From positions 16,182,001-16,246,000 of the forward strand of contig NC_135252.1 of assembly GCF_964204865.1 (NCBI RefSeq): 64,000 nucleotides of DNA, read 5' to 3'. This document shows positions 2,765-59,953 of this stretch, in pieces; within the stretch, counting starts at the first letter, position 1, and each line of letters opens with the position of its first letter. The translations under genes were made by a program, and so were the position numbers. This DNA comes from Styela clava (Eukaryota). The notes below the pieces were generated by a model. That model was not told the origin of the DNA, did no database searches, and worked only from the letters and a program-made list of their open reading frames with translations.

Positions 2765-3218
2765 CAGGTTGGTCCAAGGCGGTCGGCTTCGCGGGCCACA
2801 AAATTATTTTTGCATTGTTCGCGGGCCACAATAGTGCCAAGAATAGGTAAACAGTGCAATACAAAACAAACACTTTTATTTTGCAAACAAATAGTTATCA
2901 GACATAGCCATCCCAGGCTAATAGAATCCGCATTTTTAGTTTTCTATGATGTCTATATTGTTAGCATACCGATATTCCCGACCAAAAAGATAGAAATGAT
3001 AATGATTTAGACTGCCATGAACATCATTCAACTTCGCTAGTTGCCTCAGCTATCCATAACACTAGTCAATTCAGTGATACTATTGATGTAACAATATGTC
3101 AAAAGATTTTTCTGATCAATTTTATTACGAAACAACACGCAATGCGATTTTTTGATTACTCTCCGAATGTGACGCGGGCCACAGATAATGAAGCGGCGGG
3201 TGGGTTTGGACCACCCTG
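2765..3218. mobile_element. hAT (Buster-type) MITE
   Basis: TIRs caggttggtccaa / ttggaccaccctg (12/13 match); perfect 8-bp TSD gacTAgtt at 2757-2764 and 3219-3226 with central TA. Confidence 0.85.
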
Positions 3219-3548
3219 GACTAGTTAGTACTATATTTGTAACGAGGTTGGCTGACATCGAATTGATATTGATGATATTGATTGATATTGATGGCCAATA
3301 TTGGCCGATTTCTCTACTTGATATGGCCGATATTTGGAGTCTGAGACTGTGTTACGAATGAGTTATCCTATAAAAAATATAATATTGATCGAGTCATTTT
3401 ATTTTTATATTTCCTTTTTGTCAATAAAATTTAAAACACGATGTTTGCATTCAAATTGCCGTCTAAGTATTGTCGATGTAGTACTAAATAATGATTGAAT
3501 GATTTGGATTCAAGAAATAATATTACAACATTGTACATACAATTTTAG

Positions 3549-4415
3549 ATGAATTCCAAGACGTTTATTCATCTGTTTCTAATCGCCGTACTGGCATCTG
3601 ACCTGGGACATGCTTGGCTGAAGTGGGACCGAAGACCTTCGGAAAAAATGACAAGCGTTGAAAATGAGGTAATTCTCAAAGGCTAAATCTTTTCATTTTA
3701 GGCCAAACGTATTTTACTAAATTAGCAGCTGTGAAATTTGCTTATGAATGGACAATTCCCTATTTCAATTTAAACTACTCTCCTGTCAACAGAGCAGACA
3801 CTGTCGCAACATTATAACCTCGTGTGAATTTTAGCTCATCACTTCCTATGAATAATCATATATATATTATTTAATACTATTGTATCTAGGATAGCCACTC
3901 ATTCCAACAATATTTGCACAACGCACCAAGAGACATATCTGCATTACATGGTATCGCCAGTATGAACTTAGGTAGGATATTGTATAAACGTCTTATTGAA
4001 AAAAACTGAATTTTAAGTTGAATAAAGCGTACAAATATTTTTTCGGAAATTGACACTTGGGAGGTAAAAGTTGATTTAAAAAAGTTAAGAGTGAAAAAGT
4101 TTTGCCAATTTTAATTCTACTCCATAAGGTTTTACATTTCGAACACGTTGATTTACCGCGTGCACTGATTTTGCATGAAACAGCCCATGCCAATAACCAC
4201 ATTTTGAAACATTCCTCGCTGCATTTTAAACCACTAATAGTAGTCAATTTCGTTAAAGTATATTAAATAGAATACATTGCCATTTTTCTAATATTAATAA
4301 TTTTAAAACAGACCAAATTGAAAAACTTGCCCAGACCATGATGGAGGACAGCAGAAGAAATGACGAAGATCAAGTCGCAGAGGAATTGGCAAACAGAGCA
4401 GCCATGATGCGTTAA
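3549..4415 (+). CDS. Divergent secreted prepropeptide, copy A (101 aa; coding exons 3549-3668, 3890-3971, 4312-4415)
   Basis: Spliced at GT-AG: MNSKTFIHLFLIAVLASDLGHA-WLKW-DRRPSEKMTSVENE|DSHSFQQYLHNAPRDISALHGIASMNL|DQIEKLAQTMMEDSRRNDEDQVAEELANRAAMMR*. Same intron phases (0,1) and motifs (MNSK, WDR, SFQ, MNLD, EEL, AMMR) as the last two introns of copies B-J; ATG directly follows an AG acceptor. Confidence 0.85.
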
Positions 4416-6012
4416 AATGATTACATGATATTTTATTTACTCAGAAATTCAAATTTTATCGGACGGATAGTGCATTTTGACGATATATTATTTCGGTTTC
4501 ACAAAAACAAAATCTAACATGTATATGTTTTTAAAAGAGTGGATTTTAGTTTTGCGGTATATGAGCAAAAGTTTGATCTTGAGACATTTCAACAAATAAA
4601 CGAATATTCCTGAAATTAAATGTTATTATTGTTCATCTGTAAAGTGAAGTGAGAAGTGGGTATACGTATCATAAATAAAATGTAAAGAGAATTACTGTTA
4701 AAACCAGATGTAATGTGTATCATTATTTCACTATATCTGCCAAATCTGAGATAAGTAGTACTTTAATTTTAACGAAAAAATTAAAACATCGGAGACATCA
4801 TTTCATTTTATAGGAGTATCTAAAATACTAAAAATTATCAAAACTAGATTCAAAATAGAATATCAAGCAATATTCAGCTTGGCGACATAAATTTTTGCAA
4901 TAAAGTACCTAAATAAAATAACTGATTTGCGCCCAATTCTATAACATGTATTTTATATTAAAATAATAAATTATATTTGTATTAACAACCAACTTATATA
5001 GAAAGGTTTAGTAAACTCGTAATTTTTGATATAAATTCTCATTTTGTTATTTCAAATTATAGCAAATTCCGTCTTTAAAGCTATGTTCACAATACACTAT
5101 ATATGTTTTAAGAATATTCGGCTTAGATGCGGAACAAATGAAAACGCGTGTATTTCTGGTCCATTTCGAAGCAATTTGGTGTTATTTGTTTTTCTGATGA
5201 AGCTTCGGATTTACTGAATATAAACATTCGAAATGAGCATTTCAATGAATGAATAAGAATTATTATGTGATATATCCACAATCCGTTAGGCCATCAAGTT
5301 GACGAAATTCTGTTAAAGTTTTGTGTGGGTCTTTGCGTCTCGTGTGTATTCCAGCGGATGTTTGTTTATTTCATCACTGTGCTTTTTTGAATCTCAGTTC
5401 ATTGTTGATGAAGTTGATTAATGAGTCATAACTTTGAGCTGGCAGTCTGTTGAACCAATTGTTACTACCATTTACTATATTCAAATTTTAGAAAGATCTG
5501 GATACTGCTAGCAACGATGTAAAAAGTTCAATTATCTTTGAGATAAGCCAATTAATTATTTCACAACTTGAAACAAAATACAATTGTCAAAATATGCGTT
5601 CTGTCTTCGATACACTCTCATGTTTTGGCCTAGGGTCGATATTGACGGGATAATGATATAGCAAGTCTTCCAATTTCACGATATCAATCTTTTTAAAATA
5701 GAAAATGAAAGTCAAAACAATACCATTACGAATGTGATTCAAGACACATTTCCATCCAGGCGAGATGTTGCTGAAATTGTAAACGAAATACATTCAAAAC
5801 GTATGTTAGCCTACAAGCCCAATATTATTGTGCATTCAACTTCCGATTACAGGAATTTCCATAAAATTTCCTACCAAAGTTATTTTTGACATGGAATAAA
5901 TAATAATTTGCTGTTCATAAATGTCTGGGAAAATTTATGTTATGAAAAAACAAACAAAATGGTATTGCCTTAGTCAAGCGTGCTGTTGGGTAAAATGCCA
6001 CTAACGAAGAAG

Positions 6013-6020
6013 TATATAAA
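6013..6020 (+). promoter_or_regulatory. TATA box of copy B (equivalents at 9137, 15475, 22838, 27043, 36196)
   Basis: tatataaa in conserved context in each unit, about 60 nt upstream of a conserved splice donor (gtaagg in C, F, J) that defines a non-coding first exon. Confidence 0.6.
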
Positions 6021-6469
6021 CGCGAAGAATTTGATGCAAATTATATTGAGGCGAATCTACACACAGAAGATGTTAATGGCAGGAACTGGGTATTTCCCTG
6101 CCTATCATTTGTCAAACGATTCGTGTTGATAATTAGAATTTGGCTTTTGGTTTAAACTTTTTGAGCTCTTTTGCTTCCCGTGTTCGATGTGATATGCAGA
6201 CAGATCGCGACGCATTGAGAAACATCTTACGCACAGATTGCCCCATCAGTGATAAATATCTGTTTACATACGTGAAAATGTTTACTACTCATTGATCTAC
6301 CAAAGCTGACGCCGTGTTTTTTCATTTGAAATATTGTCCTCCAAGTTGATATCTCGCACTATATTTGCACTACAGAAAGAATTGAAGAACGTAGAAGAAT
6401 AAGTTATAAAAATAAAGTATATTCAGAAACTAGAAACTATAACTTAATATTACATTATGAATTTTATAG

Positions 6470-7765
6470 ATGAATTCCAAGTTTCTCGTTCTATTGCTCC
6501 TTGTTGCTTTGTTAGCAATTCAACATGGCGATTCCTGGGGTCTGAGACGACGCCGGGGAAAGAAAGGTAGAGGATGGCGTAAGGCAGGGTAAATTTCATA
6601 TTAATAGAATCCATTGGTTATATAATGTAACAATATTGGCAATTTATTGAAAAGTGCATTAGTTAAATTCGGTGAAATTAGCTTACACCTATTTGTTATA
6701 TTTTTGGTAAGAGTGTATTTTGATGATAGATTTTCGGAAAAAGATTTCTCTCGAAACATTTGCAATTTTTCAATCAGACTAAAGAATCATGATTATTTAC
6801 GAGAACAAGTTTTATCATATTTATTTCACTTTCTTGACAAAATACGCCATGTACGTATTCTCCTCAAATCTGTTGTTTACTAACCTAATAGCATTCTTTC
6901 GAAAGGAAATAGAAGACCAGAATTCCGTTGGTTAAACTGGAAAGATGGAGCGTAACCACATTGGTATCACTAGTTCAGCATTAACAGGCTAATTATTTCT
7001 TAATGATAACAGAATTTGGCATTTTTTTCCAGAAAAGTACTTGGCGGCATTGCTAAAGTCGGTCTCAAACTTCTTGGATGGGATCGTGATTCTTTTGAAA
7101 AACTGGCCTATCTGAAAAGCGAGGTTAGCCCTTTTTTATTTTATTTGTCTTTTATTAATTTATTTTATTATTCTATCATTTTTTTTTACTTCTTGCTGTT
7201 ATTTATCTGTATATAGGACAGCGACTCGTTTCAAGAATTTTTGGAGAATGCGAAGGATGAATTCGAAGACGAATTGTCGGATGACGACATGAACAAATTA
7301 GTTTCTGCATTGAATTCAGTCTCTGGAATGAGTCTGGGTGAAATGTTTTTTTTTAAAAAGGAGATAATGCTCTGATACATCCTGTAGTGGAAATTAGCAC
7401 TTGTCCATTTTCAATGTTTCGATATTTTTATCGCTTTCACTATTCTTATAACTCGAATTTAAAAAATTATATCGATATCAATGCATTTGGTGCACTTTAC
7501 ATACTAATTGCCATCACGAAAAAGATTTCCAATATTATATGACTTATTACTTACATATATTACTTCGTATCAAACAAAGTTGCAACCACTCGTATATAGG
7601 TTTATTCGCGATAATTTATTTATTTCTTCTTGTTATTGAACAGACGAAATTGAAGAATTTGCTCAGAATATGAAAAGCAACGATGTAGAAGTTAATGAGA
7701 GCTTAAAGAAAGCTACCCATCAACTCCGGGAGGAATTACTCCTGAGATCCGCAATGATGCGATAA
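6470..7765 (+). CDS. Styelin-like cationic antimicrobial prepropeptide, copy B (150 aa; exons 6470-6588, 7033-7123, 7217-7337, 7644-7765)
   Basis: MNSKFLVLLLLVALLAIQHGDS-WGLRRRRGKKGRGWRKAGKVLGGIAKVGLKLLGW-DRDSFEKLAYLKSE|DSDSFQEFLENAKDEFEDELSDDDMNKLVSALNSVSGMSL|DEIEEFAQNMKSNDVEVNESLKKATHQLREELLLRSAMMR*. Canonical splice sites, phases 2/0/1, signal-cationic-acidic layout. Confidence 0.9.
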
Positions 7766-9609
7766 ATGAGTTCATAATGCGAAAATTTGGCTATATTGTT
7801 CCTGAATTCCAGTCAATTTTCAGTTACTGTCACAGTACACTTCAATTGCTCTAAAAAAAAACATAAAACTTTCAAGAAGCAATTTTTATCCATCTCTGTT
7901 TGCTTCGGAAACGATTGTATTCTCTTTTGTTTTCAAAACCTCTTGACTATAACGATTTATGAAGATGATGAAATATATACCAATATATATGCCTTTATTC
8001 CAGTGGTTCTCAACCTGGGTTTTTTTTTTCAGGGGAACGCAGAACAAAATATTTTTAAGTGCGACTTTTTTCTATAAAATATATCCTAATCAGTGATAGA
8101 AAAAATAAATTAGTTCATAGGCGGAAAAATTACTAACGAGGAAAAATGAAAACCAATTTTTAGGGCTTTGAGTTGACCAATCCCGAACTAAGAACTCCCA
8201 CTTCAGAACACTCTCACCACCTTGACATCTTATCTGTTGACAGCACGCATTTTAATTTGACTATAAGTCTGCGATTTTTAACATTTTTCTATTTACTTCC
8301 CTCCCTTTCTATTAATACTATATTGTTTATTGAATCTCTAATGAACCACTTTTCATTGTAATGTAATACAAGATCGGAATATAAAATTACCACGAATGAC
8401 TCTTGTACAACTGTGAAAGGCACCATAATATTGGAACATAAATTTAATTTTTATACAAACCAAATAAGAAACTTGAGATCACTACGGATGTGAAAGAGCT
8501 TTTAGGTGAAGAATCACATAATTTTTGTAACATACAGTATATATTACGTGAGTTGCATAAATGACTGCCGCTTAATTTCATAATATACATTTCATTCTCG
8601 AAATACATCCCGATTTTATTATTTCAAATGACACACCTGCTCCATTTTTGTATTATTGCGTTCTGTCTTCGGTCAACTCTCATTTTTCGAGCCTAGCCTC
8701 AATATTCACAGTATAGTTATTATATTTTTCAATGTCACGATATCAATCTTTTCAAAATCGAAACTGAAAAACAAAACAACAACATTACGAATGTGTTTCT
8801 CGACACATCTCCATTCAGGCGAGATGTTGCTGAAAATAGTAAACGAACTACATTCAAAACGTATGTTAGCCTACAAGCCCAATATTGTTGTGCATTCAAC
8901 TTCCAAATACAGAAGTTTCCATAAAATTCGCCACTAAAGTTATTTTTGAGTTCACAAGCATATGGTTTTATATATTTAAATTAGCAAAGTTTTCTTAAAC
9001 TGTGAAGCATATGTCGACGTGGAATGAATGATTTGCTGTTTATAGATGTCTAGAAATTTTTTTTGTTACAAAAATATTCAAAATCGTGTTGCAGTAGTCA
9101 AGCGTGCTGTTGTGGAAAACGCCCGTTAGGAAAAAGTATATAAACGCGAAAAATTTGTTGCAAATCATATTGACGCGAATCTACACTCAGAATACGTTAA
9201 TGGTAAGGAGTGGATCTGAGAATTTATTTGTCTATCATTTGGTAAACGATTCGTCTCGATAATGAAAATTTGGCATTTGGTGATCAAAATTTTTCAACCT
9301 TTTATGCTCCCCGTGCTCGATTTGATGCGCAGATCGCGTCGCATTGTGAAATGTCTCACCCCCAGATTGCCCCACCAATGAAAACAATGTATGATTACAT
9401 GCATGAAAGTTTTTTACCCATTGTTTTACCGAAACTGACGGCGTGTTTTTAATTTCGTAATGGTGGAATGTTTTCCTTCAAGTTTATATCTCCCCACTAT
9501 ATTTGCACTACAGAAAGAATTGAAAAATCTAGGAGAACGTACTTTTGAACAATAAAATATATTCAGAAACTAGAAACTATAACTTAATATTACATTATGA
9601 ATTTCATAG

Positions 9610-11649: not shown

Positions 11650-13344
11650 CTAAAACGCAAAATTACCTATTACATGCATCACTGCTCTTCTCGATGAAAA
11701 GCATAATTTAGTTTCACTTTATTTCTAACAAGCGTGATATAAAAATTGAGAAGCTTATTAGTCAATTGATATTTTCAATAGGTCATCCGCGAAAAGGTTT
11801 TGAATAAGCGTGTATTATGACTTCTGCCTGAAACATTAGAGCCAACTATTCATATGGCATATGATAACTTATCATGTAGAATTGCAAGTATGTGGTCTCT
11901 CTCTGGCATACAAGTGGGAAAATACCTGCAATTACTAAATTTAATACGAACCATTGGGGCGGGACGGCTGCTGCCAGACTTCGCTTTTCCTGTAATTTGA
12001 GCATTTGTTTTGTTGAGTGCCAATGTTGCACCGGGAGTGTACTGGATCAGGTATGCCGTAATATCTTCTTCGCAAGTTTTAGGCCGCGAGCCGAGGCCAT
12101 TTATCTTTCAGTTTCGTAGCGCACATAAGGTAACTACCTGAAAATGATTTTAAAATGTTCCTTAGAAATTTAGTAACAAATATTGCCTTGTTCCCACTTC
12201 CAAAAGTTGCACGTTTTACAGAAAAGACGCTTTTACCACAATAAATATGTGTTACCATCTGTCCTATTTCCTCTGCTTTCCCGGTATTATGGGCCATTGA
12301 ACGCAGACTTCTGCATGACGTAACAATTAAATTAGTCAGCTGTAGGTGCATCCCCAGTGGTCGGATGAATATCAGATGTACTACTACTGCTCGCTTTTGC
12401 GTTGAGTAGCCTTTCCATAGTTTTTTCAGTTATTATTAGTTCAGTTATTCTAAGGAGGTGTTGAAAAGTATAAGTAAGGTATTAAACACTTGTATATCCT
12501 TACCATAAATAGCAATTTTAGTTGAGCACTAGCTTTTAAAAGACGTTGTTAAATAGGTACGGTGCGGTAACTCCAAGGAAAGCTAGACCTAGAATAATAT
12601 GTCACAAACAACGATATTTTCTGGCTTGCATGAAATGTTTATGATTAATTTAATGACTCTTCTTGACTATTCAGCAGACTTATACTACTATATAGGCCAC
12701 AGCATATTTGGAAATAGAAATTAATGGCTGTTTCTGTATGCACGGTTGTGTGAAAGAGAAGAAAATAATCAATTTTGCTAATGTCGGTTGGTCTAAATCT
12801 AAATTCATAGAGGCGACAAGAACATGGGAAGCAATGATAAGTTATGCCGGAGTGGAAAGAAAGTAGCATTGGAAACGATTGAGAGGTGAGAAATAAAGTT
12901 GTAGACAGACAGTTGATGTTTTAAAATATAGTCTAGGGCTCTAGGCCTATAGTCCATACTCATACTGTCATAGGGCATTTCAGACTGTGACATGTCAAAA
13001 TTTAGTGTAGATATAGTCTAGTAATGGTATGCAAACACTGCTGGACTGTAGTACATTCAATGAGCATATATACGCTCATTGAGCAGGCTACATCATATAA
13101 AATGCATTATGTATTCAAGGTATTAGTTAGTATTTAGTGGTATTTTTACACTCGTACTGTTCCAAAAATGATTTTCTTCCTCATTTTAGATACTGTACTA
13201 CAAAAGAAAACGGCAATGTTCAACCAATCCGACCTAACGCAGGCTCTAATCCCTGCTGCTATCAGTGCTATAAAATGGATTAAACAAGAAGTCTTGAAGC
13301 GTAAAGGTATATGAGAATCATAATAGTTGCAAATTGCAAAATAT

Positions 13345-13623
13345 TCAATGCAGCAACCAGTTTGTTCATGTCGTCATCCGACAATTCGTCTTTGAATTCA
13401 TCCTTCGCATTCTCCAAAAATGCTTGAAACGAATCGATGTCCTATATACGAAATAATAACAGTAAGAAGACAAAATAATGAAAAATGATAGGCTGATGAA
13501 AGAAATAACAAAGGAGTTTGGAACAAGATGACCTAGCTTTTCAGTTAGGCCAGTTTTTCAATAGAATCACGATCCCATCCAAGAAGTCGAAGGCCGGCTT
13601 TAGCAATGCCGCCAAGTACTTTT
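13345..13623 (-). pseudogene. Inverted prepropeptide pseudogene fragment, copy D (exon 2 and truncated exon 3)
   Basis: KVLGGIAKAGLRLLGWDRDSIEKLA*LKS* has two stops; exon 3 breaks off after ALN; intron-1 homology continues to about 13950; no exon 1 or 4. Confidence 0.88.
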
Positions 13624-14608: not shown

Positions 14609-15595
14609 AAAAAAAACGTGGTAATATACATGGTATTTAGCAAAAATATGAGGCAAAATATTACGAAATATTTTTGTTGAACGAAAATAAATCGAACATG
14701 CTTTGAATAGTTTCCAGAGTAAATTTAAGTTTTGAGGTACATGAGCGGAACTTTGTTCTTGAGCATTTTTAACAAGTAGACGAAAATTCCTGCAATACAA
14801 TTTCTGTAATTGTTTATATATGTAGATATATATAGAGAGAGAAATGTTTGTTTGTAAGTTTTAAATCAGACGTTCGTCGAATTTTAGCAGGTTCAAGGTT
14901 ACACTTGAATTGGCTCCTTATAGAATATACGTGCCATCTTATATAGATGCGGACTCGCTGTCAGTTTTGATCAAAATCACGTCAATCACGAGATCCAGTT
15001 GGCTGCTTTGTTGCTAATAAAAATATTTGGCTGATGACAGCCAAAAAAATATAATTCAGCATTAATCAGGATTCGATAGTTTGGTAGATTTTTTTTGAAA
15101 ACTGAACCGAGCGCATTTAAATGCGCTTTAAAAAAAGGACAAACAACAACATTACGAATGGGATTCACGACACATTTCCATCCAGGCGAGAAGCTGCTGA
15201 AAATAGTAAACGAATTACATTCAAACCGTATGTTAGCCTACAAGCCCAATATTGTTGTGCATTCAACTTCCAATCATTGGAATTTCCATGAAATTCGCTA
15301 CTAAAGTTATTTTTGAGTTCACGAGCATATGGTTTTATATATTTAAATTAGCAAATATTTTTTAAACTGTAAAGCATATGTCGACGGGGAATAAATAATT
15401 TGCTGTTTATAGATGCCTAGAAAATCGTGTTGCAGTAGAAGCGTGCTGCTGAGGAAACGCCCGTTAGAAAAAAGTGTATAAACTCGAAGAATTTGTTGAG
15501 AATCATATTGAAGCGAATCTACACTCAGAAGACGTTTAGGGTAATGGGGGGAAATGAGTACTTATTTGTCTATCATTTAAACGATTCATCTAGTA

Positions 15596-17255: not shown

Positions 17256-20200
17256 ATGAATTTCAAGTTTCTCGTTCTATTGCTCCTTGTTGCTTTGTTA
17301 GCAATTCAACACGGTGATTCCTGGGGTCGGAGACGACGCCGGGGAAAGAAACGTAGAGGATGGCATACAGCAGGGTAAATATCATAACAATTGAATCCAA
17401 AGTTTATATAATACAGTGGTTCCAACCTTTTATTATATCGCGGCACGCTATTGAGCACTTTAAATAATCGCGGCACTCCTATCTCAAAACATGAACTTTT
17501 CTACTCTTAAAGCCAGTTTGCTATAAAATAAAAATAAACAAAGAAGATCAGACAAAGGGTATTTTATTCATGTGAGTACAAAATACCCTGTATTTAGTAA
17601 CAGGTATAGAGAGACATATATCTAACTCTCTGAGAGAAACACACTTTTAACGCAGGCGAGGGGACTCCAATAATTTCGTCTATATTTAAACACATCTTGT
17701 TTCCGCTTTACAAAATAAACATTACTGAAAAATACGATAGTCGAGCGCGAATGGTTAATAGTTTCCGATACTATAACTATTTTCTTACAATAATGTACAC
17801 GAGAGCGCCTTCGGAGCACCTCACATTATTGTATAAGATAAGCGGCCTCGCGGGTAATATGTGGTCTTCAAACGCACCGTCAATCACGCGCTTCGGTTTT
17901 GCTGGCCCTACCCCGCTCCACGTTACGCCCTTAATATTATCAGGTATTCTTACTTTTACACAATCTTTGCACAATTCTTTTTGTTGCAATCTGATATATT
18001 TCTCCCATTGACAAAATCATTCAAGTCAATTCAATCAATTCAAATTATAGTCAGCACTTGCGAGAGAAATGAAATGCCCGAGCATATATCGATGGTAATG
18101 ATATGTCGAAACGCCTATTCGACTTTTTAGAACGCAAAAACTATTCGAAAAACGTAACACAGTACGCAGTACAGTCTTTGCACAGTAATTTGTTTCCTTG
18201 TTTGACATTTTTAATTTTACGAAACGGTGTTGGCGCTCTTTATGCTAAACTAAGAATTGAAAAATACCCAAATTCGACTCCTCAAATATGTCGTTTCTGT
18301 TTGTTAGGAAGAGCCGTGGGGTAATTCTCGCGGAATTCAAGAGATTGGAGATCAAAAATGAAATCTCTTCGCGGCACACCAATGTGGCACGGTGGTTGGG
18401 AACCACTGATGCAATGTATATAACAATATTGCCAATTAAAATGCCGGGATGACACTTATTTGTAGTATAAATATGGCTCTAATTTGATTGGTCAGTAGGA
18501 GTTAACATTCTTTATGTATACGTCTTATTGAGGACGTAACTCAAAACAAAAGAAATAAAACATTTTTGCGTCGTTTTCAAGCTTGATATATGCTTGTCCG
18601 AGTGTTTGTGACCCCCCCGTTGCGCGTCCAATACCACCCCGTTGCGCGTCACTTTTTTTTCGCATATTTTCAATTCTGCGAGTTTTATATCTGTAAGTAT
18701 TTGAAAACAAAGAAATATACAGAGGAATATGTTATTACTTGAAAGAAACTAATTTGAGCGAGCGAGCAATCGTTCTCGGCGCGTAAACAAGGTAGTAATC
18801 ATTACCCGCACAATAATAAACAAACAAGGATCGCGTTCGCTCGAAACTGTTGGCGAAAACATGCTCTCTTTGTATCTTGAATATTTTGCGTTGCGTTTCG
18901 CTCCAGAATGCCACTCTTATCTCGTTTGAAAGACGACGATCTTCTCCATTTTTGGGATATTAGATGTCGAGTCCATCTGGCTTGTATTTATCACTCCGAT
19001 TTGAAATACAGAACTTTTTTCAAATTTTTTTTTCACATCTCTCGTTTCAACGCAACGGGGTTGAGACAAACGTGCTCGTGTCTCGAGAAACATTTTGTAT
19101 GAAGCGACGTAGATACTCTTTCAAAAGAAATCGCAGTGAGGTCTCTCGCACGTAAAGTAGTGACATTTTGTAGAAGGGGGATTTTTTTTCAAAGAAGAGT
19201 TGGTTTTAGAGGAAAATATTGACAATTTATTAAAGTGTGCACTAGTTAAATTCGATCACATAATTAGTTTACACCTATTTGTTATATTTTTGATCATAGG
19301 TTTTCGAAAAAAGTTTTTCTCAACACATTTGCAACATTTCCAATCAGACTAAATAATTATGATTATTTACAAGAACAAGTTTTAGCATATTTATTTCTTG
19401 ACAGCATAGGCCATATATTTCTGTCCCAGAAATCTGTTGGTTACTAACCCAATGGCATTCTTTCGAAAGGAAATACAAGACCAGAATTCCGTTGGTAAAA
19501 CTGGAAAGATAGAGCGTACCCATATTAGTATCACTGCTTTAGAATTAACAAGATAATTATCTCTGAATGATGGTGAAATATTAGCTTATATTGAAACAAC
19601 AAAATGATTCTTATTTAGAAAAGTAGTTGGCGGCATTGCTAAAGTCGGTCTCAAATTTATTCCATGGGATCGTGATTCTTTGGAGAAACTGGCCTACCTA
19701 AAAAGCGAGGTTATCTTTTTTACACTTATTTATTTTTTATTATTTCCTTTATCATCTTATCATTTCGTCGTAATATTGTTATTTATCTGTATATAGGACA
19801 GCGACTCGTTTCAAGAATTTTTGAAGAATGCGAAGGATGAATTCGAAGACGAATTGTCGGATGACGACATGAACAAGTTGGTTTCTACATTAAATGCAGT
19901 CTCTGGAATGAATCTGGGTAAAATGTTTTATTAACAACAGAAAAATGTAGTTGAAACCAGCACTTGTTTATTTTCAATGTTTCGCTATTCTTATCGATTT
20001 CACTATTCTTATAACACGAATTAAAAAAATTATATCGATATCGATGCAATTGGTGCATTTTCCATAATAATTGCCGTCACGAGACAGATTTCCAATATCA
20101 TATTACTTACATATATTACCTCGTATTAAACAATGCTCCAACCACTCGTAAATGGGTTTATTCGCGCTGATTGATTTATTTCTTCTTGTCGTTTAACAGA

Positions 20201-27451: not shown

Positions 27452-28337
27452 ATGAATTTCAAGTTTCTCGTTCTATTTCTCCTTGTTGCCTTTTTAGCAA
27501 TTCAACATGGTGATTCCTGGGGTCGGAGAAGACGCCGGGGAAAGAGACGTAGAGGATGGCATACAGCAGGGTTAATTTTATAATAATTGAATCCTTTGTT
27601 GACAGTCTATGAATTGTGCACTAATATTATCTGGTAATAAAACAAATGACTTTTATTCAGAAAAGTACTTGGCCACGTTGCTAAAGTTGGCCTTCGACTT
27701 CTTCGTTGGGATCGTGATTCTTTGGAGAAACTGGCCTACCTAAAAAGCGAGGTCATCTTTTTTTGAACCCGTTTATCTTTTATTATTTCTTTTATCGTTC
27801 TATCTTTTTTATCATTTTGTCATATAACTGTTATTTATTTGTATATAGGACAGCGACTCTTTTCAAGAATTTTTGGAGAATGCGAAGGATGAATTCAACG
27901 ACGAATTGTCGGATGACGACATGAACAAGTTGGTTTCTGCATTAAATTCAGTCTCTGGAATGAATCTAGGTAAAATGTTTTTTTAACAGACAGAAGATGA
28001 TCTGATACATCCTGTAGTTGAAAGCATTTGTTTATTTTTAATGTTTTGTTGATTTTATCGCTTTCACTATTCCTTTAGCAACAATTTAAAAAATTATATC
28101 GATATCTACAAATGCAATTGGTGCATTTCCCATGCTAATTGCCATCACGAGACAGATTTCCGATATCATATGACTAATTACTTACATATATTACTTCGTA
28201 TCAAACAATGTTCCAACCACTCGTATATAGGTTTATTCGCGTTAATTTATTTATTTTTTCCTTGTCTTTGAACAGACGAAATTGAAGAATTTGCTCAAAA
28301 TATGAAAAGCAACGATGTAGAATTAATGAAAGCTTAA
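27452..28337 (+). CDS. Cationic prepropeptide, copy G, C-terminally frameshifted, possibly a pseudogene (exons 27452-27570, 27661-27751, 27849-27969, 28276-28337)
   Basis: Core WGRRRRRGKRRRGWHTAGKVLGHVAKVGLRLLRW intact; 1-nt deletion in exon 4 gives ...SNDVELMKA* (ancestral stop at 28394-28396); 5'-UTR donor mutated (ttaagg). Confidence 0.75.
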
Positions 28338-28606
28338 AGGAAGCTACTGATCAACTCCGTGAAAAGTTACTCCTGAGAACCGCAATGATGCGATAAGTTC
28401 CGAATGCCGCTCTACTAATTCATATGACAAGATAATAAATTTTCAAGCTTTTATTCAAAATACGTCATGAATATCTACATCCGCAAAAACAACGAGGCGA
28501 CAATTCTACATATGTGTGTGCCATGTTACTTGGATCAAAAATTTATCCATATTGTTTCTGAAATCTAGCAAAAGTTATGCTTATAGTATATTTCTTTATC
28601 GAGTTA

Positions 28607-32672: not shown

Positions 32673-33258
32673 TTATCGCATCATTGCGGTTCTCAGGAGT
32701 AACTTTTCACGGAGTTGATCAGTAGCTTCCTTCGGGCTTTTGTCAACTTCTACATTGTTGTATAGAGAGAAGAGATGCAAGTCTTAGGGATAAAGACTGA
32801 TCACTCTAGTATATAAAAGTTCGATTCCCACGTTATTAAATTGACACGCGTTATGGAATTTGACTCCAATCTGGATTCTTTCAGACGATAATAAGCACAC
32901 AATGTTGAATGCCGAATTGTTGTATATTATTGAAAAGATGCACGATCCAAATTCCAAATACAGATAAAATTGTAACACACTTAATTCTAAAACAGTAAGA
33001 TTACAAGTGAACCAAAAAGCACGATATTATGCGGTCCTCTCGGCAAACCGGAAACGTTACGTCATCAAATTGGTGGATACGAGAAAGGCAATACATGGAG
33101 CGAATGCATTATCGCTGTTGCGAAACATAATGTGGCCTATTTTGTGAAATGTTACATGCTATTAGTATGAAAGGGTTAAATACATTATAATCCATAGTTA
33201 CACAATGCACATTCGCTACAGTTGCTTTCCATATTCCGAGCATATTCTTCAATTTCGT
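32673..33258 (-). pseudogene. Prepropeptide copy H: exon 4 only, split by a solo LTR
   Basis: cag|(D)EIEEYARNMESN [insertion] NVEVDKSPKEATDQLREKLLLRTAMMR*; exons 1-3 absent. Confidence 0.85.
32761..33220. mobile_element. Probable solo LTR (460 bp)
   Basis: 4-bp TSD gttg on both sides; ends tatagaga...tcgctaca (degenerate TG...CA short inverted ends); interrupts exon 4 of copy H. Confidence 0.65.
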
Positions 33259-34959
33259 CTGTCGAACGAAGTATATAGTCAAGGGTATCATTTCAATACG
33301 AAATCGTTTTTCTTGACAAGTCAATACGGATAATTTTATATAGGATTGATTGGAACTTTGTAAAATAGAAAGTAATATTTTAAGAAATTAGTGATATGAT
33401 ATCGAAATTGGTTTGGTGATGGCACAAAAAAGTTTCGATGGCATTCAATGATAAGCGTTTTTAAAATTTAGCAATACAAACAGAAATGGGAAATTAAATG
33501 ATAAATGGAATAATTTAAATTAAACAAATGCTAGTTTAAACTACGAGATGTATTTGGGAACCGCTGGGTTACATCATTCCCCACATCATAAATATTACAC
33601 AAAACATGAGCCCGAATTCGCAATATATACGATGGTACGCATACTTCTGGAGCGCCTAAAATTGACCTTATCTGAGAAAGCTGAAAACTTGGTTTAATGA
33701 TTTAGTTCGTCGTAGTAAAGTTGTTGCAAAAAGCACAAGATTGGTTTCTTCTCTTAATACTTCATATAAAGTACTGTAAGAAAAGGTGAAAACTAATGAA
33801 TGGAACGACCCCTTTCTTCAGGAGTGAATTCAAATCCAACAAAGTTTCCGTTCATGCTTACGGAGATGAGGTAGTTCTAACGTTTGTTTAATCGAAATCT
33901 TTATTTTGTCTATTTAATATTCTGGAAAACAGAGTTTTATACAGCACTGAACAACACGATATGAGTAGCAGATTAAACTCATTTATAAGCTTTGTACTTT
34001 TCACCATATATAAGACTTTCGGAATTTTGAAGAAATGCTCTTGTTTCATATTGCTGTACGTTGTTTCATTAATAGGGCAAAATAATGCAACGTCACTTTG
34101 ACGGTAAGCAACTTTTGTGTGTTTATAGACATGATTTACCGCGCATAGTAGCATTCAACTATACATTCATCCTTGGGTTTATGTATTTCTGGTAATTCTA
34201 TCTATAAGAATTTCTTTTAGGCAATCAGTCCTCTTTAGGCAATCACCTCCAACATGATGATGGAAGTCCCCCTTATGGGTGTCAAGAGTTTACCGGACGT
34301 CATTCACCGGTAATGATGTGCGTCGGATGTGATTTCTAAGGCTGCATGAGGATTAATCAGTGGGTAGATCAGATTATGAATGAATTGGTAATTATATATG
34401 CTTCATAAAAATTGAGGTCAAGCTGTATGGCAAGAATGCTGGCACTTTCGCTTAGTCTGGTATACCAGAATAACAGACTTAGATAAGAAGCGATTACAGG
34501 TATTGCGACAGTCAGTTTGTTGAAATTACAATTGAAACATGAGAATGACAAAAAACGTTGGGGCGCAGACTAGCACGAAAAATGCTCTCAAAACTAGAAT
34601 GAAGATTCGACTATGGCTATGCGACAAATGAATATGTATATCAGATGCAAACATATGTTCTACGCCACGCCCTTTAAATAAATAAAATAATATCACACAA
34701 ATTCCGCTCAGTAATTTTTCTTATCGGAATCAATCCACAATGTAATACGCTCCAACTAATTCAAATACTATCATAAAGAAAAATACCATAGTATAACTAT
34801 TGCTAGATTTCAGAAACAATATGACCAAATTTTTGATCCAAGTAACATGGCACACACAAATGTAAAATTGTCGTCCCGCATTTTTCTTGTTTTCCAGTTG
34901 TAGATATTCATGACGTATTTTGAATGAGAGCTGGCAAATTTATGATCTTGTTATATGAA

Positions 34960-35845
34960 TTAGTAGAGCAGCGTTCGAAACATTGCGGTTCTGAGGAGTA
35001 ATTCCTCACGGAGTTGATCGGTAACTTGCTTTAAGCTTTCATTAACTTCTACATCGTTGTCTTTCATATTCTGAGCAAATTCTTCAATTTCGTCTGTTCA
35101 AATACAAGGTAAAATAAATCAATTAACGCGAGTAAACCTACATTCGAGTGATTGGAACTTTGTTTGATACGAAGTAATATATGTAAGTATTAGGTCATAT
35201 GATATTGGAAATCTGTGCCGTGATGGCAATTAGTATGGGAAATGCAGCAATTGCATTTGTAGATATCGATATGATTTTTTAAATTGTTGCTAAAGGAATA
35301 GTGAAAACGATAAAATTAACGAAACATTGAAAATAAACAAGTGCTAGTTTCAACTACAGGATGTATCAGAGCATCTTCTCTCTGTAAAAAAAAACATTTT
35401 ACCCAGATTCATTCCAGAGACTGAATTTAATGCAGAAACCAATTTGTTCATGTCGTCATCCGACAATTCATCTTTGAATTCATTCTTCGCATTCTCCAAA
35501 AATTCTTGAAAAGAGTCGCTGTCCTATATACAAATAAATAACAGTTATATGACAAAATGATAAAAAATGATAGAACGATAAAAGTAATAATAATAAAAGA
35601 TAAACGAGTTCGAAAAAAGATAACCTCGGTTTTCAGGTAGGCCAGTTTCTCCAAAGAATCACGATCCCATCGAAGAAGTCGAAGACCGACTTTAGCAACG
35701 TGGCCAAGTACTTTTCTGAATAAAAGTCATTTTGTTTTATTACCAGCCAATATTAGTGCACAATTCATAGACTGTCAACAAGGGGTTCAATTACTTTAAA
35801 ATTTACCCTGCTGTATGCCATCCTCTACGTTTCTTTCCCCGGCGT
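34960..35845 (-). pseudogene. Inverted prepropeptide copy I lacking start codon and signal peptide
   Basis: Exons 2-4 open (KVLGHVAKVGLRLLRW...; ends RTAMFRTLLY* after loss of the normal stop); a deletion joins intron sequence (ctataacta) to acgccggggaaag, removing acceptor, ATG and signal peptide. Confidence 0.88.
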
Positions 35846-41227: not shown

Positions 41228-41542
41228 AAAAGTAATTGGGTGGGATTGATAAAGCCCGTATCAAACTTCTTGGATGGGATCGTGATTCTTTGGAAAAACT
41301 GGCCTATCTGAAAAGCGAGGTTAGGTCTGTTTTTAAAACTTATTGATCCTTCTTTATTTCTTTCATCATTCTTCTAGCATTTTGTCTTCTTACTGTTATT
41401 TATCTGTATATATATATATAGGACAACGGCTCTTTTCAAGAATTTTTGGAGAATGCGAAGGACGAATTCAAAGACGAATTGTCGGATGACGAAATGAACA
41501 AATTGGTTTCTGCATTGAATTCAGTCTCTGGAATGAATCTGG
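41228..41542 (+). pseudogene. Prepropeptide copy K (exons 2-3 only)
   Basis: Exon 2 frameshifted (aaa gta att ggg tgg gat tga); exon 3 (41422-41542) open; exons 1 and 4 missing. Confidence 0.85.
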
Positions 41543-43446: not shown

Positions 43447-44368
43447 TGTAAGTTCGAAAATTGGCATTATCTTCTATCAATGGGGATTTCCCTAAAGTGA
43501 AACGACAAATGGAAAATTCCAGCTGTCCACATATGTTGCAATCGACTCTCGCTGGACAAGTCTAATCTTGCCTCGCTCTCACGTGACTCGCTGCCGTGTT
43601 TGACGGCAGTCGTTGCTTAATATTCGCATAGATTGCTTTTTATGTGTTAAATTAGTTACGTTTAACGTCCGGTTGTAGGGATAATAATTGCCCATACCTA
43701 AGGCTTATGTTATTGGAACATATAACTGCTGTAACTTTTATTGTAGAATATTATATAAGCTATAAATAGACTGTAATTTGATTGATTGATTCTCTGAATC
43801 CTGAACTGAAATTGAAGTTATTTCTGAATATTTGTTATCGCTTGGCTTAAAACGTTTCGGTAAGTTTTAGTATTTGTTGTTTATGATAAGAATTCTTGTT
43901 ATTAGTTCAAATAATATTCCAAATAATAATAATTAATTGGTATTTAAATAGTATATAGTATTTCATGTTAATTAAATACTGTCAGTAGAGCTAGACAATG
44001 TCGCATTGTTTAATGATTAAGTTTGCAAGTGCTTTAATGCATTATTGTTATTTTCTGTGGTCTGTATTTGAATATTTTCATTTAAATTCAGAAAACCGCT
44101 ACGCTACACATCACCATACACATTGCATCATTCTGTTATTAGTACGCTACACCTCTTTAACCTCATTCAACATTGTGAACTGTTTTATTGGATTTAATTC
44201 AATATATCAAATTTCATTGTACAACATTTGATATTTGTGGCATTGGAGGACACACTGAGAGTTGCGCGTTTTCGAATAGTTTTTCAAGAACCAAAGAACA
44301 GCCAGATATTTCAGTCACCCCCTTATGCGACACCTGTATTTGCCAGGATACATAGAAAAGGTGTTACA
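43447..44368 (+). repeat. 5' LTR
   Basis: Six substitutions versus the 3' LTR by manual comparison. Confidence 0.95.
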
Positions 44369-50586: not shown

Positions 50587-51508
50587 TGTAAGTTCGAAAA
50601 TTGGCATTATCTTCTATCAATGGGGATTTCCCTAAAGTGAAACGACAAATGGAAAATTCCAGCTGTCCACATATGTTGCAATCGACTCTCGCTGGACAAG
50701 TCTAATCTTGCCTCGCTCTCACGTGACTCGCTGCCGTGTTTGACGGCAGTCGTTGCTTAATATTCGCATAGATTGCTTTTTATGTGTTAAATTAGTTACG
50801 TTTAACGTCCGGTTGTAGGGATAATAATTGCCCATACCCAAGGCTTATGTTATTGGAACATATAACTGCTGTAACTTTTATTGTAGAATATTATATAGGC
50901 TATAAATAGACTGTAATTTGATTGATTGATTCTCTGAATCCTGAACTGAAATTGAAGTTATTTCTGAATATTTGTTATCGCCTGGCTTAAAACGTTTCGG
51001 TAAGTTTTAGTATTTGTTGTTTATGATAAGAATTCTTGTTATTAGTTCAAATAATATTCCAAATAATAATAATTAATTGGTATTTAAATAGTATATAGTA
51101 TTTCATGTTAATTAAATACTGTCAGTAGAGCTAGACAATGTCACATTGTTTAATGATTAAGTTTGCAAGTGCTTTAATGCATTATTGTTATTTTCTGTGG
51201 TCTGTATTTGAATATTTTCATTTAAATTCAGAAAACCGCTACGCTACACATCACCATACACATTGCATCATTCTGTTATTAGTACGCTACACCTCTTTAA
51301 CCTCATTCAACATTGTGAACTGTTTTATTGGATTTAATTCAATATATCAAATTTCATTGTACAACATTTGATATTTGTGGCATTGGAGGACACACTGAGA
51401 GTTGCGCGTTTTCGAACAGTTTTTCAAGAACCAAAGAACAGCCAGATATTTCAGTCACCCCCTTATGCGACACCTGTATTTGCCAGGATACATAGAAAAT
51501 GTGTTACA
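50587..51508 (+). repeat. 3' LTR
   Basis: Direct repeat of 43447-44368, followed by the GGTAC TSD. Confidence 0.95.
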
Positions 51509-54096: not shown

Positions 54097-54637
54097 GGAT
54101 CGTGATTCTTTGGAAAACTGGCCTACCTGAAAAGCGAGGTTAGGTCTGTTTTTAAAACTTATTTAACTTTCTTTATTTCTTTCATTATTCTTTTAGAATT
54201 TTGTCATATTACCGATATTATCTGTATATAAATAGGACAACGACTCGTTTCAAGAATTTTTGGAGAATGCGAAGGATGAATTCAAAGACGAATTGTCGGA
54301 TGACGACATGAACAAACTGGTTTCTGCATTAAATTCAGTCTCTGGAATGAATCTGGGTAAAATGTGATATAAACAAGGAGTAGATGCTTTGATACATCTT
54401 GTAGTTGAAACTAGCACTTGTTTATTTTCAATATTTTGATATTTGTATCGTTTTCACTATTCTTATACAATGAATTAAAACGGCCATCACGAGACAATAT
54501 TTCAATATTATATGAATTATTAAGCATAAATAAATAAATAAATGAAAAACATTGATGTAGAAGTCAATGAAAGCTTATAGAAAGCTACTGATCAAATCCG
54601 GGAGGAGGTACTCAAGAGAACCGTAATGATGCGATAA
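54097..54637 (+). pseudogene. Prepropeptide copy L (3' part of exon 2, exon 3, damaged exon 4)
   Basis: Exon 3 (54236-54356) open; exon 2 truncated and frameshifted; exon 4 lacks its acceptor and has an in-frame TAG before ...RTVMMR*. Confidence 0.85.
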
Positions 54638-57620: not shown

Positions 57621-59953
57621 CACGCTGACAAAAAACAATCGTGATTTTATCAAAAAGCTGTACGAAAAGTTGCCCGAAAGTATGAATTGATAATATAATA
57701 TTCAATATTTCACGATTTTTGAATGGTAAAAAGTAACCCAACAGTAGTATGAAAAGTTGCAAGTAGTTAAACGAGTAGTTTTAAGTAGCGAAGCTTTTCC
57801 GAAAGTAGCCAAATCTGGCACCGCTGCACAGCACATGCTTATCTACACTGATTTCACGTACAGATTCGAGCTCTGATCCTAGTTTTTCCGAAAGAAGCGA
57901 AATGTGACAACAACGTACCGCACATACCTAATTACACTGGTTTCCCGTACAGACTCCGGCCTCTCGTCGATCGCAGTTAAATATTGCATGTTTTTCAATG
58001 AATTTGTCGAATTGTTAATTTTTGTTCAAATGTAGAATGTTTAGCGAACTACTAAAATAAATATCTGAATCTGCCTCAAATCACTTGGCGTGCCATCAGA
58101 AATCCTCTCGCGTGCCACAATTGGCACGCGTGCCAGGGGTTGCTGAGCCCTGGTCTAGTGTATACATATCGCCAGGCCAATACCCGAATTGCCTAAGTCA
58201 TTTTTGGCGGTTTTGAGTTTTTTTATAAAATAGGTATTTATGTAATGTCTGTTAACTCAGATTTTATTTTAAGAATTTCGAAACCCATAAAAAAGGAGAT
58301 TTTGTATGACATGCACACTTGTGCAATTGTTTCGCCATAAGGAGTTATCATTGTGATCGCCAGACTATTGTGATATCACAAAGGAAAAATAACCTCGGCG
58401 AAGTATTTTCGAGTTTTTGCATCTCAGATCCCAGCTTAGCCCCATCATTTAACAGATAAAACAAGGGTCGTCACATCTCCATATCAATACCTGAAGTAAA
58501 AGCATATTATTTGAGATTAAATTACAGACAAGAATGAACTGAAACTTAACTGAATAACATATTTTGACAGATTGTGAATAAAGTGATCGTACAGAGAACT
58601 AGATCTCGTATCAAATGCAACCGCTCAATAACTAATGATTGGTGAACATTTGCGATAAGTTTGCGATTTGTTTAAGTAAAACGATTATACTCGCTGCAAT
58701 CATGCTGGGAAATTGGACTTTCTCGAATACTTTCCAAAAGTTGTAGAATGTCATTAGACAGGACATACTTTTTTTTGCTGTGCAATTTTCCATCAATGTG
58801 ATAAACACATTTTTATTATTGATAAGATCCTGTTCATTTGACCAGGAATCTTTAAACGGAAGAATAAATGCATACTTAGGTTACTATGTGTGGTAAATCA
58901 TTTCTAGAAAACACAAATTGCGATTGGTGTTTATGCTAATAAAAAGTACAGTTGTACATATTGTTTCTTGTTCAGATCTATGATGTCGTCGAACATATGT
59001 TGCAGTATTGTCACTATTATCATACGTCACAGTAAATGGTACGCCGCGAAACTGAATTTTTAAGGTTTTAAGCTTCCCGTTTTTTTGAAGATTAATTTGT
59101 CGTTGGATTTTACTCAACTTTGAGAAAACTTCACGCTGACAAAAAACAATCGTGATTTTATCAAAAAGCTGTACGAAAAGTTGCCCGAAAGTATGAATTG
59201 ATAATATAATATTCAATATTTCACGATTTTTGAATGGTAAAAAGTAACCCAACAGTAGTATGAAAAGTTGCAAGTAGTTAAACGAGTAGTTTTAAGTAGC
59301 GAAGCTTTTCCGAAAGTAGCCAAATCTGGCACCGCTGCACAGCACATGCTTATCTACACTGATTTCACGTACAGATTCGAGCTCTGATCCTAGTTTTTCC
59401 GAAAGAAGCGAAATGTGACAACAACGTACCGCACATACCTAATTACACTGGTTTCCCGTACAGACTCCGGCCTCTCGTCGATCGCAGTTAAATATTGCAT
59501 GTTTTTCAATGAATTTGTCGAATTGTTAATTTTTGTTCAAATGTAGAATGTTTAGCGAACTACTAAAATAAATATCTGAATCTGCCTCAAATCACTTGGC
59601 GTGCCATCAGAAATCCTCTCGCGTGCCACAATTGGCACGCGTGCCAGGGGTTGCTGAGCCCTGGTCTAGTGTATACATATCGCCAGGCCAATACCCGAAT
59701 TGCCTAAGTCATTTTTGGCGGTTTTGAGTTTTTTTATAAAATAGGTATTTATGTAATGTCTGTTAACTCAGATTTTATTTTAAGAATTTCGAAACCCATA
59801 AAAAAGGAGATTTTGTATGACATGCACACTTGTGCAATTGTTTCGCCATAAGGAGTTATCATTGTGATCGCCAGACTATTGTGATATCACAAAGGAAAAA
59901 TAACCTCGGCGAAGTATTTTCGAGTTTTTGCATCTCAGATCCCAGCTTAGCCC
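57621..59953 (+). repeat. 822-bp direct duplication (57621-58442 and 59132-59953) flanking a copy of 53258-53946
   Basis: No differences seen between the two 822-bp copies by eye; each contains a hAT-like right end (ggcacgcgtgccaggggttgctgagccctg). Confidence 0.9.

What the first reader, a model, noticed from the sequence alone, without database searches (positions are those of the whole stretch)
3549..4415. Copy A: same precursor scaffold but the core is only WLKW, and the acidic tract is gone too
Seen: A keeps signal, WDR boundary, SFQ, MNLD, EEL and AMMR plus both propiece introns, but lacks the cationic core and its intron. Its exon-3 equivalent has 2 acidic residues versus 12 in copy B (whose core has 12 K/R), because DEFEDELSDDD is absent. 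The frame stays open despite strong divergence. Inference: the acidic tract co-evolves as a charge-matched inhibitor of the core, and A is a scaffold for a Trp-flanked tetrapeptide. Ascidians are known to make short modified peptides (halocyamines, tunichromes, plicatamide), so A is a candidate ribosomal precursor for that kind of product. This last link is speculative.
Basis: partly seen in the sequence, partly recalled or inferred. Interest (0 to 1): 0.78.

Follow-up and report, generated by a model that had tools for sequence, protein, structure and literature searches.

The report
Core-less copy of sea-squirt peptide gene
One old, still unbroken copy in a sea-squirt cluster of antimicrobial-type peptide genes has lost its positively charged peptide and most of the matching acidic stretch, but no RNA from it was seen, so it is a neat evolutionary relic rather than a shown source of a new small peptide.

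Summary
Copy A (3549-4415, +) is a three-exon, 101-codon open gene model in Styela clava. It keeps the family's signal peptide, both propiece introns in the same phases, and the conserved propiece motifs. Only WLKW stands where its neighbours carry a 27-33-residue core with 12-14 K/R, split by an intron.

More distant upstream relatives also have the poly-Arg core and the same phase-2 intron. A is therefore derived: an in-frame deletion fused the signal exon to the end of the core exon, and WLKW is the first core residue plus the last three.

The next exon lost 10 of 12 acidic residues, 6 in a 13-codon gap and 4 by substitution. Across four lineages, core and propiece charges track each other (+1/-6 to +22/-21). 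This fits the published charge-balance hypothesis.

A was long under constraint: pN 0.31-0.33 against saturated pS 0.68-0.76, and it is intact while 6 of 11 younger copies are broken.

Present activity is unproven. No RNA-type contigs cover it in 4 of 4 runs laid, although the neighbour shows spliced contigs. No public protein holds its last exon.

The tetrapeptide-precursor idea has no support. The scan noted the wider family before, on this window and on other DNA of this genome.

The parts
3549..3614 (+). Copy A, exon 1, part 1: signal peptide (22 codons). ATG at 3549, preceded directly by an acceptor-like ttttag and an in-frame TAG.
   Evidence: The best 11-residue Kyte-Doolittle mean is 2.78, and the residues at -3/-1 are G/A, as in upstream relative U1. 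The cleavage site itself is inferred.
3615..3626 (+). WLKW: all that is left of the cationic core, namely its first residue plus its last three.
   Evidence: Searches align LKW-DR of A with L(R/G)W-DR at the end of the B-type core exon. Charge +1.
3627..3668 (+). Exon 1, part 3: start of the propiece (14 codons). It is homologous to the 3' end of the B-type core exon. The donor GT is at 3669.
3669..3889 (+). Intron 1 of A (phase 0). It corresponds to intron 2 of B-type genes.
   Evidence: GT..AG. The same phase as B's intron 7124-7216, which is confirmed by spliced contigs.
3890..3971 (+). Exon 2 of A, the equivalent of B-type exon 3. It has 27 full codons and 2 acidic residues, and a 13-codon in-frame gap where B has its acidic tract.
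   Evidence: E 3.5e-4 against a B-only profile. Unique in the genome.
3972..4311 (+). Intron 2 of A (phase 1, splitting the D codon after MNL). Same position and phase as in B-type genes.
4312..4415 (+). Exon 3 of A, the equivalent of B-type exon 4. It has a 6-codon in-frame gap, and the stop codon at 4413-4415 follows AMMR directly.
   Evidence: 41-47% identity. E 3.6e-3 against a B-only profile.
4595..4600 (+). First AATAAA after the stop codon; a possible polyadenylation signal.
   Evidence: Not supported by any RNA.
6470..7765 (+). Copy B, the comparison gene. Coding exons are 6470-6588, 7033-7123, 7217-7337 and 7644-7765. Its 12-K/R core is split by a phase-2 intron.
   Evidence: Spliced contigs with GT..AG joints were seen in run X5, and two of the three joints also in X9.

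Best explanation
Copy A is an old, derived, core-less paralogue inside a Styela clava tandem super-cluster. The cluster's genes encode secreted precursors built as signal, poly-Arg/helical cationic peptide, acidic helical propiece.

Shown:
- An in-frame genomic deletion fused the signal exon to the last codons of the core exon. It removed about 30 core residues and the phase-2 core intron.
- The following exon then lost 10 of its 12 acidic residues.
- The rest of the scaffold stayed open, spliceable and constrained: start codon, signal, two introns and the terminal motif.

Inferred:
- Once the cationic cargo was gone, selection for a charge-matching acidic tract lapsed. The reading frame was still kept by selection for a long time.
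- If A is made today, its product is a secreted, weakly acidic (net about -5) propiece-only protein of roughly 79 residues with no antimicrobial cargo.
- It is expressed at most weakly or in tissues not sampled.
For: Derived state:
- Upstream relatives U1 (L004) and V (L003) share the signal, the WG-poly-Arg leader, the phase-2 intron inside the core and the four-coding-exon layout.
- A shares DR after the core, SFQ, MNL and the AMMR-stop only with B-type copies. Their common ancestor therefore had the core.

Charge tracking, core/propiece: A +1/-6; B-type +12 to +14 / -10 to -14; U1 +17/-20; V +22/-21.

Acid loss came partly by substitution at acidic columns: columns 3, 7 and 10 are acidic in B and both outgroups, column 14 in B and one outgroup.

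Constraint:
- A against five B-type copies gives pN 0.31-0.33 and pS 0.68-0.76 over 97-101 codons.
- All three length changes are in frame.
- In a substitution-only drift simulation, ORF, ATG and splice sites survive in 7% of runs at K=0.1, 2.5% at 0.15 and 0.7% at 0.2.
- 6 of 11 B-type loci in the window are visibly broken, although intact B-type copies differ from each other by only dS 0.14-0.27.
- In the two propiece exons A changes no faster than B-type copies.

The signal stays hydrophobic and keeps G/A at -3/-1.
Against: - No contig on 3300-5917 in 4 of 4 RNA-type runs, while B-type exons are covered in 3 of 4 and spliced in 2.
- Word share 0.00 in 7 of 7 RNA-guess runs.
- No protein with A's last exon among 1.84 billion representatives, although a B-type copy of this contig is there.
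- RefSeq lists five B-type proteins and no A.
- A has no detectable similarity to the roughly 770-bp upstream region that B-type copies share.
- A's signal and first propiece segment change faster than in B-type copies: A-unique 18-20 against 8-9 with outgroup U1, p 0.03-0.05.
- The date of the core deletion is unknown. The measured constraint could predate it.
Confidence: 0.5

Rival explanations
1. A is a dead gene. The core deletion, or loss of its promoter, silenced it fairly recently, and the open frame is what remains before decay sets in.
For: - No RNA contigs in 4 of 4 runs and a 0.00 word share in 7 of 7 RNA-guess runs.
- No public gene model.
- No homology to the shared B-type upstream region.
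- Faster change in the signal and first propiece segment.
- Pseudogenes are common in this cluster: 6 of 11 B-type loci are broken.
Against: - An intact ATG, four splice dinucleotides and 101 open codons are expected in under 3% of neutral runs once K >= 0.15, so any death must be recent.
- Three separate in-frame length changes and directional loss of conserved acidic residues look like evolution under a kept frame.
- pN is far below pS.
- The RNA evidence is from assembled contigs only, which drop rare transcripts (text).
Confidence: 0.35
2. A is a working precursor whose released product is the Trp-flanked tetrapeptide WLKW, perhaps brominated or otherwise modified. It would be cut out by signal peptidase and by the same protease that frees the B-type core at W|DR.
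For: - Both presumed cleavage contexts (G-x-A|W and W|DR) survive the deletion.
- The signal is intact.
- The frame has long been constrained.
- 6-bromo-Trp in Styela clava styelin D, and frog skin scaffolds that carry very short peptides, are recalled from memory and were not checked here.
Against: - WLKW is fully explained as leftover ends of the deleted core.
- Cleavage at W|DR is itself unproven. The other lineages have G|DN and Y|DN at that place.
- The named ascidian products all end in a dehydro-DOPA- or TOPA-amine, and WLKW has no Tyr (PMC3039461 passages).
- There is no expression evidence.
- A 4-residue product does not explain why 75 propiece codons stay constrained.
Confidence: 0.06
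3. A keeps the ancestral, core-less form, and the cationic core plus its intron was inserted later in the other copies.
For: A keeps some residues that match the upstream relatives rather than B-type copies. Examples are Y in the SFQ-x-Y-L motif and the D-Q-V-x-E-E-L stretch of the last exon.
Against: U1, V and B-type genes share the same WG-poly-Arg leader and the same phase-2 intron, while A groups with B-type copies by DR, SFQ, MNL and the AMMR-stop. One loss explains this; the alternative needs repeated identical gains.
Confidence: 0.03

Closest known systems
B-type genes of the same cluster (RefSeq 'uncharacterized protein' LOC144420888, LOC120343414, LOC120343285, LOC120343454, LOC120343565 of Styela clava)
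   Same: - Same cluster and strand order.
- Homologous signal peptide.
- Same two propiece introns and phases.
- 41-48% identity in the two propiece exons, and the same stop after AMMR.
   Different: - No cationic core and no core intron.
- 13- and 6-codon in-frame gaps.
- Propiece net -6 instead of -10 to -14.
- No gene model and no RNA contigs.
Styelin/botryllin-type ascidian antimicrobial peptide precursors (signal, cationic helical peptide, C-terminal propiece)
   Same: The general layout of the family that A belongs to. Botryllin is a 158-residue pre-propeptide with a 23-residue signal and a 37-residue mature peptide of charge about +11, made in morula cells (PMC9966394 passages).
   Different: - A lacks the mature peptide altogether.
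- Sequence kinship of this cluster to styelins was not shown here. The P0001 search returned only Styela clava unnamed proteins and Pfam gave nothing.
- A resemblance of the helix and propiece motifs to styelins is recalled only.
Charge-balance hypothesis for defensin and cathelicidin propieces (Michaelson et al.; Hughes and Yeager, as cited in PMC4571063)
   Same: [quoted passage not shown] When the peptide becomes less cationic, the propiece becomes less anionic (PMC4571063 passages; PMC7073735). A is the extreme case, with cargo gone and acidic tract gone.
   Different: Here the propiece lies C-terminal of the peptide, the family is unrelated, and the evidence is four lineages in one genome. 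Inhibition by the propiece is untested.
Halocyamines, tunichromes, plicatamide (small modified ascidian peptides)
   Same: Short peptides of ascidian blood cells. Their biosynthetic origin, ribosomal or not, is still open according to the conclusions passage of PMC3039461.
   Different: All listed structures end in a dehydro-DOPA- or TOPA-derived amine and are rich in DOPA, TOPA, His or Phe. WLKW has none of these, and no product of A is known.

Membership tests
B-type cationic peptide precursor family of this Styela clava cluster | Homologous N-terminal signal peptide ending G-x-(S/A) before W | tested here: met
   Alignment. Hydropathy and the -3/-1 residues. tblastn of A's exon 1 against B-type signal exons gives E 0.002-0.003.
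B-type cationic peptide precursor family of this Styela clava cluster | Propiece exons homologous, with introns at the same positions and phases | tested here: met
   B-only profiles give E 3.5e-4 and 3.6e-3.
B-type cationic peptide precursor family of this Styela clava cluster | Cationic core of 27-33 residues (12-14 K/R) split by a phase-2 intron | tested here: not met
   Only WLKW is present. No remnant exists in six frames of 3000-4700.
B-type cationic peptide precursor family of this Styela clava cluster | Transcribed and spliced | tested here: inconclusive
   0 contigs on A in 4 of 4 runs, while B is spliced in X5 and X9. These are contigs only, so this is no proof of absence.
Styelin/botryllin-type antimicrobial peptide precursors | Cationic amphipathic mature peptide directly behind the signal | tested here: not met
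   the core has 4 residues and charge +1.
Styelin/botryllin-type antimicrobial peptide precursors | Detectable sequence homology to styelin or botryllin precursors | not tested
   No styelin or botryllin sequence was obtained from a tool. The search with P0001 returned 5 proteins, all unnamed Styela clava B-type. The supplements of PMC9966394, with the botryllin sequence, are closed.
Precursors of halocyamine/tunichrome/plicatamide-type peptides | Tyr (DOPA/TOPA) at the C-terminal end of the released peptide, turned into a dehydro-DOPA- or TOPA-amine | tested here: not met
   WLKW holds no Tyr. Product structures are in the PMC3039461 table passages.
Precursors of halocyamine/tunichrome/plicatamide-type peptides | A released small peptide detected chemically | not testable with these tools
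   Needs mass spectrometry of haemocyte extracts.
Pseudogene | Stops, frameshifts or lost splice or start signals | tested here: not met
   All signals are intact. Six B-type loci in the same window are broken.

The most novel reading that the evidence does not exclude
A is expressed in a cell type or stage not sampled here and is processed at the two retained cleavage contexts. That would make the antimicrobial-peptide scaffold a carrier for a Trp-flanked tetrapeptide, possibly brominated. It would be the first gene-encoded precursor of a small ascidian blood-cell peptide. It would also be a natural 'cargo-swap' experiment showing that the acidic tract exists only to neutralise the cationic cargo.
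Probability: 0.05. Interest if true: 0.75.

Novelty: new variant of a known kind. Interest (0 to 1): 0.33.

Why it matters
A is a natural deletion experiment inside an uncharacterised, apparently Styela clava-specific family of antimicrobial-type precursors. When the cationic peptide was lost, the acidic tract went too, and over four lineages the two charges track each other. That is clean extra support, from a new animal group and a new precursor layout, for the charge-balance idea of how cells protect themselves from their own cationic peptides. It also points to the tract that a bench test of the B-type propiece should target. By itself A is probably of little functional weight. There is no sign that it is expressed and nothing links it to a product.

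Tried and rejected
- Blastn of the A locus against the window found almost no DNA similarity outside the start of the last exon. Breakpoints therefore cannot be mapped at DNA level.
- A search for a hidden core exon in or around A found nothing.
- A search for further A-like copies in the genome found only A itself.
- The profile of the last exon against 1.84 billion representatives gave two B-type proteins and one unrelated repeat protein, with no relative in another species.
- The AlphaFold2 model of the B-type protein P0001 has mean pLDDT 54.6 and pTM 0.29. It was too poor to ask whether the acidic tract packs on the core, so it was not used.
- Pfam gave nothing above threshold.
- dS between A and B-type copies is saturated, so no real omega can be given. 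Only pN against pS is quoted.
It is another family and was not followed.
- Kinship to styelins was left untested, because no styelin sequence came from a tool.
- No paper holds the five LOC ids (0 papers). The listing shows no study of this cluster.
- Supplements of PMC9966394 (botryllin gene and sequence) are closed and could bear on the styelin link.

Full report
**What is there.** The window is contig C3:16182001-16246000 of a Styela clava assembly. A RefSeq protein of that species, on a contig of the same length (25,587,678), is encoded by a neighbouring copy.

Copy A has three coding exons: 3549-3668, 3890-3971 and 4312-4415. Both introns have GT/AG. An in-frame TAG and an acceptor-like ttttag lie directly before the ATG. 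The stop follows AMMR directly. The model has 101 codons.

The joined model was used only inside scripts. It was never sent to a search tool, and all database searches were exon by exon.

**The family.** The window holds eleven further loci of one family, called B-type here.
- A typical copy has four coding exons.
  - Exon 1 carries the signal plus a WG-poly-Arg leader.
  - A phase-2 intron follows.
  - Exon 2 carries the second half of the core, ending L(R/G)W, then DRDS...KSE.
  - Exon 3 is acidic and starts DSDSFQEF.
  - Exon 4 ends AMMR-stop.
- B's introns are confirmed by spliced contigs with GT..AG joints (6588>7033, 7123>7217, 7337>7644) in run X5. Two of the three joints are also seen in X9.
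- Five loci are intact (B, C, E, F, J). This matches the five RefSeq 'uncharacterized' proteins found.
- Six loci are broken.
  - D has a stop in exon 2 and lacks exons 1 and 4.
  - G has lost its donor and has a frameshift in exon 4.
  - H is fragments only.
  - I keeps only 12 codons of exon 1 and has no stop.
  - K has a stop and no exon 4.
  - L is truncated and has a stop.

**Check of the observation.**
- A aligns exon for exon with B-type copies: 48% identity to B in the exon-3 equivalent and 41-47% in the last exon. Intron phases are the same.
- With profiles built without A, A's two propiece exons are the best non-family hits among 2901 six-frame pieces (E 3.5e-4 and 3.6e-3; noise starts at E 0.7). 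They are collinear.
- Between the signal and DR, A has only WLKW. B has 33 counted residues with 12 K/R. No K/R-rich remnant lies in or near A.
- The exon-3 equivalent has 2 acidic residues against B's 12.
Six of the ten lost acidic residues lie in the 13-codon gap. Four were replaced by H, Q, H and R at columns 3, 7, 10 and 14; columns 3, 7 and 10 are acidic in B and in both outgroups, and column 14 in B and one outgroup.

**Polarity.** Earlier notes of this scan pointed to related genes just upstream. I fetched 40 kb upstream and found two genes of interest.
- Gene U1 lies 3.9 kb before the window.
- V-type genes lie further out.
- Both have the same four-coding-exon layout, the same signal, the same WG-poly-Arg leader and the same phase-2 intron in the core.

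A shares DR, SFQ, MNL and the AMMR-stop only with B-type copies. The ancestor of A and B-type copies therefore had core and intron, and A lost them.

LKW-DR of A aligns with L(R/G)W-DR at the end of the core exon. The simplest event is one in-frame deletion, running from just after the first core codon to three codons before the core's end, intron included. WLKW is thus the leftover of the two core ends.

**Age and constraint.**
- A's DNA is almost unalignable to the other copies.
- Over 97-101 aligned codons, A against five B-type copies gives pS 0.68-0.76 (saturated) but pN 0.31-0.33. B-type copies differ from each other by dS 0.14-0.27.
- Had the A branch drifted neutrally for most of that time, pN would approach pS.
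- In a substitution-only simulation started from A, ORF, ATG and four splice dinucleotides survive in 7% of runs at K=0.1, 2.5% at 0.15 and 0.7% at 0.2.
- All three length changes of A are in frame.
- A changes somewhat faster than B-type copies when U1 is the outgroup (18-20 against 8-9 unique changes, p 0.03-0.05). It does not with V as the outgroup (12-14 against 10). The excess sits in the signal and first propiece segment, not in the two propiece exons.
- The signal is still hydrophobic (2.78 against 3.4-3.6), with G/A at -3/-1.
- So A was kept by selection for most of its history. If it is dead, it died recently.

**Charge matching.** Net charges, with junction codons left out:

| Lineage | Core | Propiece |
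|---|---|---|
| A | +1 | -6 |
| B | +12 | -14 |
| C | +14 | -10 |
| E | +12 | -14 |
| F | +13 | -14 |
| J | +13 | -12 |
| U1 | +17 | -20 |
| V | +22 | -21 |

- The order of the two charges is perfectly inverse over the four independent lineages, which is only four points.
- This is the 'charge balance hypothesis', known for alpha-defensins and cathelicidins (passages of PMC4571063) and for frog peptides (passages of PMC7073735).

**Is A active?** The evidence is negative but weak.
- The run index lists 11 runs. Four, from one study and DNA-like, hold A fully. The seven RNA-guess runs hold 0.00 of its words.
- I laid 3300-7900 on four RNA-guess runs from three studies.
  - All 17 bins from 3300 to 5917 are empty in 4 of 4 runs.
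  - B-type exons are covered in 3 of 4 runs and spliced in 2.
  - These are assembled contigs, which lose rare transcripts.
- A profile of the last exon, with A as first row, found 3 proteins among 1,835,955,588 representatives: copy C's RefSeq protein, a B-type fragment and an unrelated repeat protein. A scores 56 bits against that profile in the genome search and would have been seen. No public gene model therefore holds A's last exon.
- A also lacks the roughly 770-bp upstream region that B-type copies share at 71-88% identity.

**The tetrapeptide idea.**
- Nothing supports it beyond the survival of both presumed cleavage contexts.
- Cleavage at W|DR is itself a guess. U1 and V have G|DN and Y|DN there.
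Their origin is still open (passages and table of PMC3039461). WLKW has no Tyr.
- A four-residue product would not explain constraint on 75 propiece codons.

**Verdict.** A is a derived, core-deleted, long-constrained but apparently unexpressed and unannotated paralogue. It is a useful natural data point for charge balance in a new, uncharacterised ascidian peptide family, not a demonstrated precursor of a new product.

**Literature.** No paper holds the five LOC ids. The listings show no description of this cluster. I saw passages only of PMC9966394, PMC3039461, PMC7073735 and PMC4571063.

Noticed in passing
L004:6073-7699 (G000:C3:16178073-16179699), L003:285-1401, L005:866-2062, L002:5778-6972: Upstream of the window lie more distant members of the same super-family. 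They have longer cores (+17 and +22), very acidic propieces (-20 and -21) and the same exon layout. The last exon of the L002 copy is in two frames (a frameshift) compared with L003 and L005.
   Followed up: partly
window 13343-13622(-), 27452-28393, 32676-33259(-), 34975-35844(-), 41230-41541, 54098-54634: Six of the eleven B-type loci in the window are visibly broken by stops, frameshifts or missing exons. Copies I and J lie head to head, and I has lost most of its first exon.
   Followed up: partly
window 17373-19618: Copy E has a core intron of about 2.2 kb, where the other copies have about 90-450 bases. This is probably an insertion.
   Followed up: no
window 44004-44126 and 51144-51266; 57749-57990 and 59260-59501: Pairs of identical translated hits about 7.1 kb and about 1.5 kb apart point to local direct duplications unrelated to the peptide genes.
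   Followed up: no
window 4536-4636 and 14716-14817: A 100-base stretch just downstream of A recurs at 76% identity elsewhere in the window. It is probably a dispersed repeat.
   Followed up: no
window 5971-6033 joined to 6464: A contig of run X5 joins a 5' untranslated exon to the signal exon of a B-type copy, with 39 other letters in between. All family members, A included, have an acceptor-like site directly before the ATG, so a 5' UTR exon is expected. For A it was not found.
   Followed up: partly
It is a different family.
   Followed up: no
P0008 (RefSeq LOC120343565, 210 aa): One RefSeq B-type model is 60 residues longer than the others. It may be a mis-joined or fused model.
   Followed up: no
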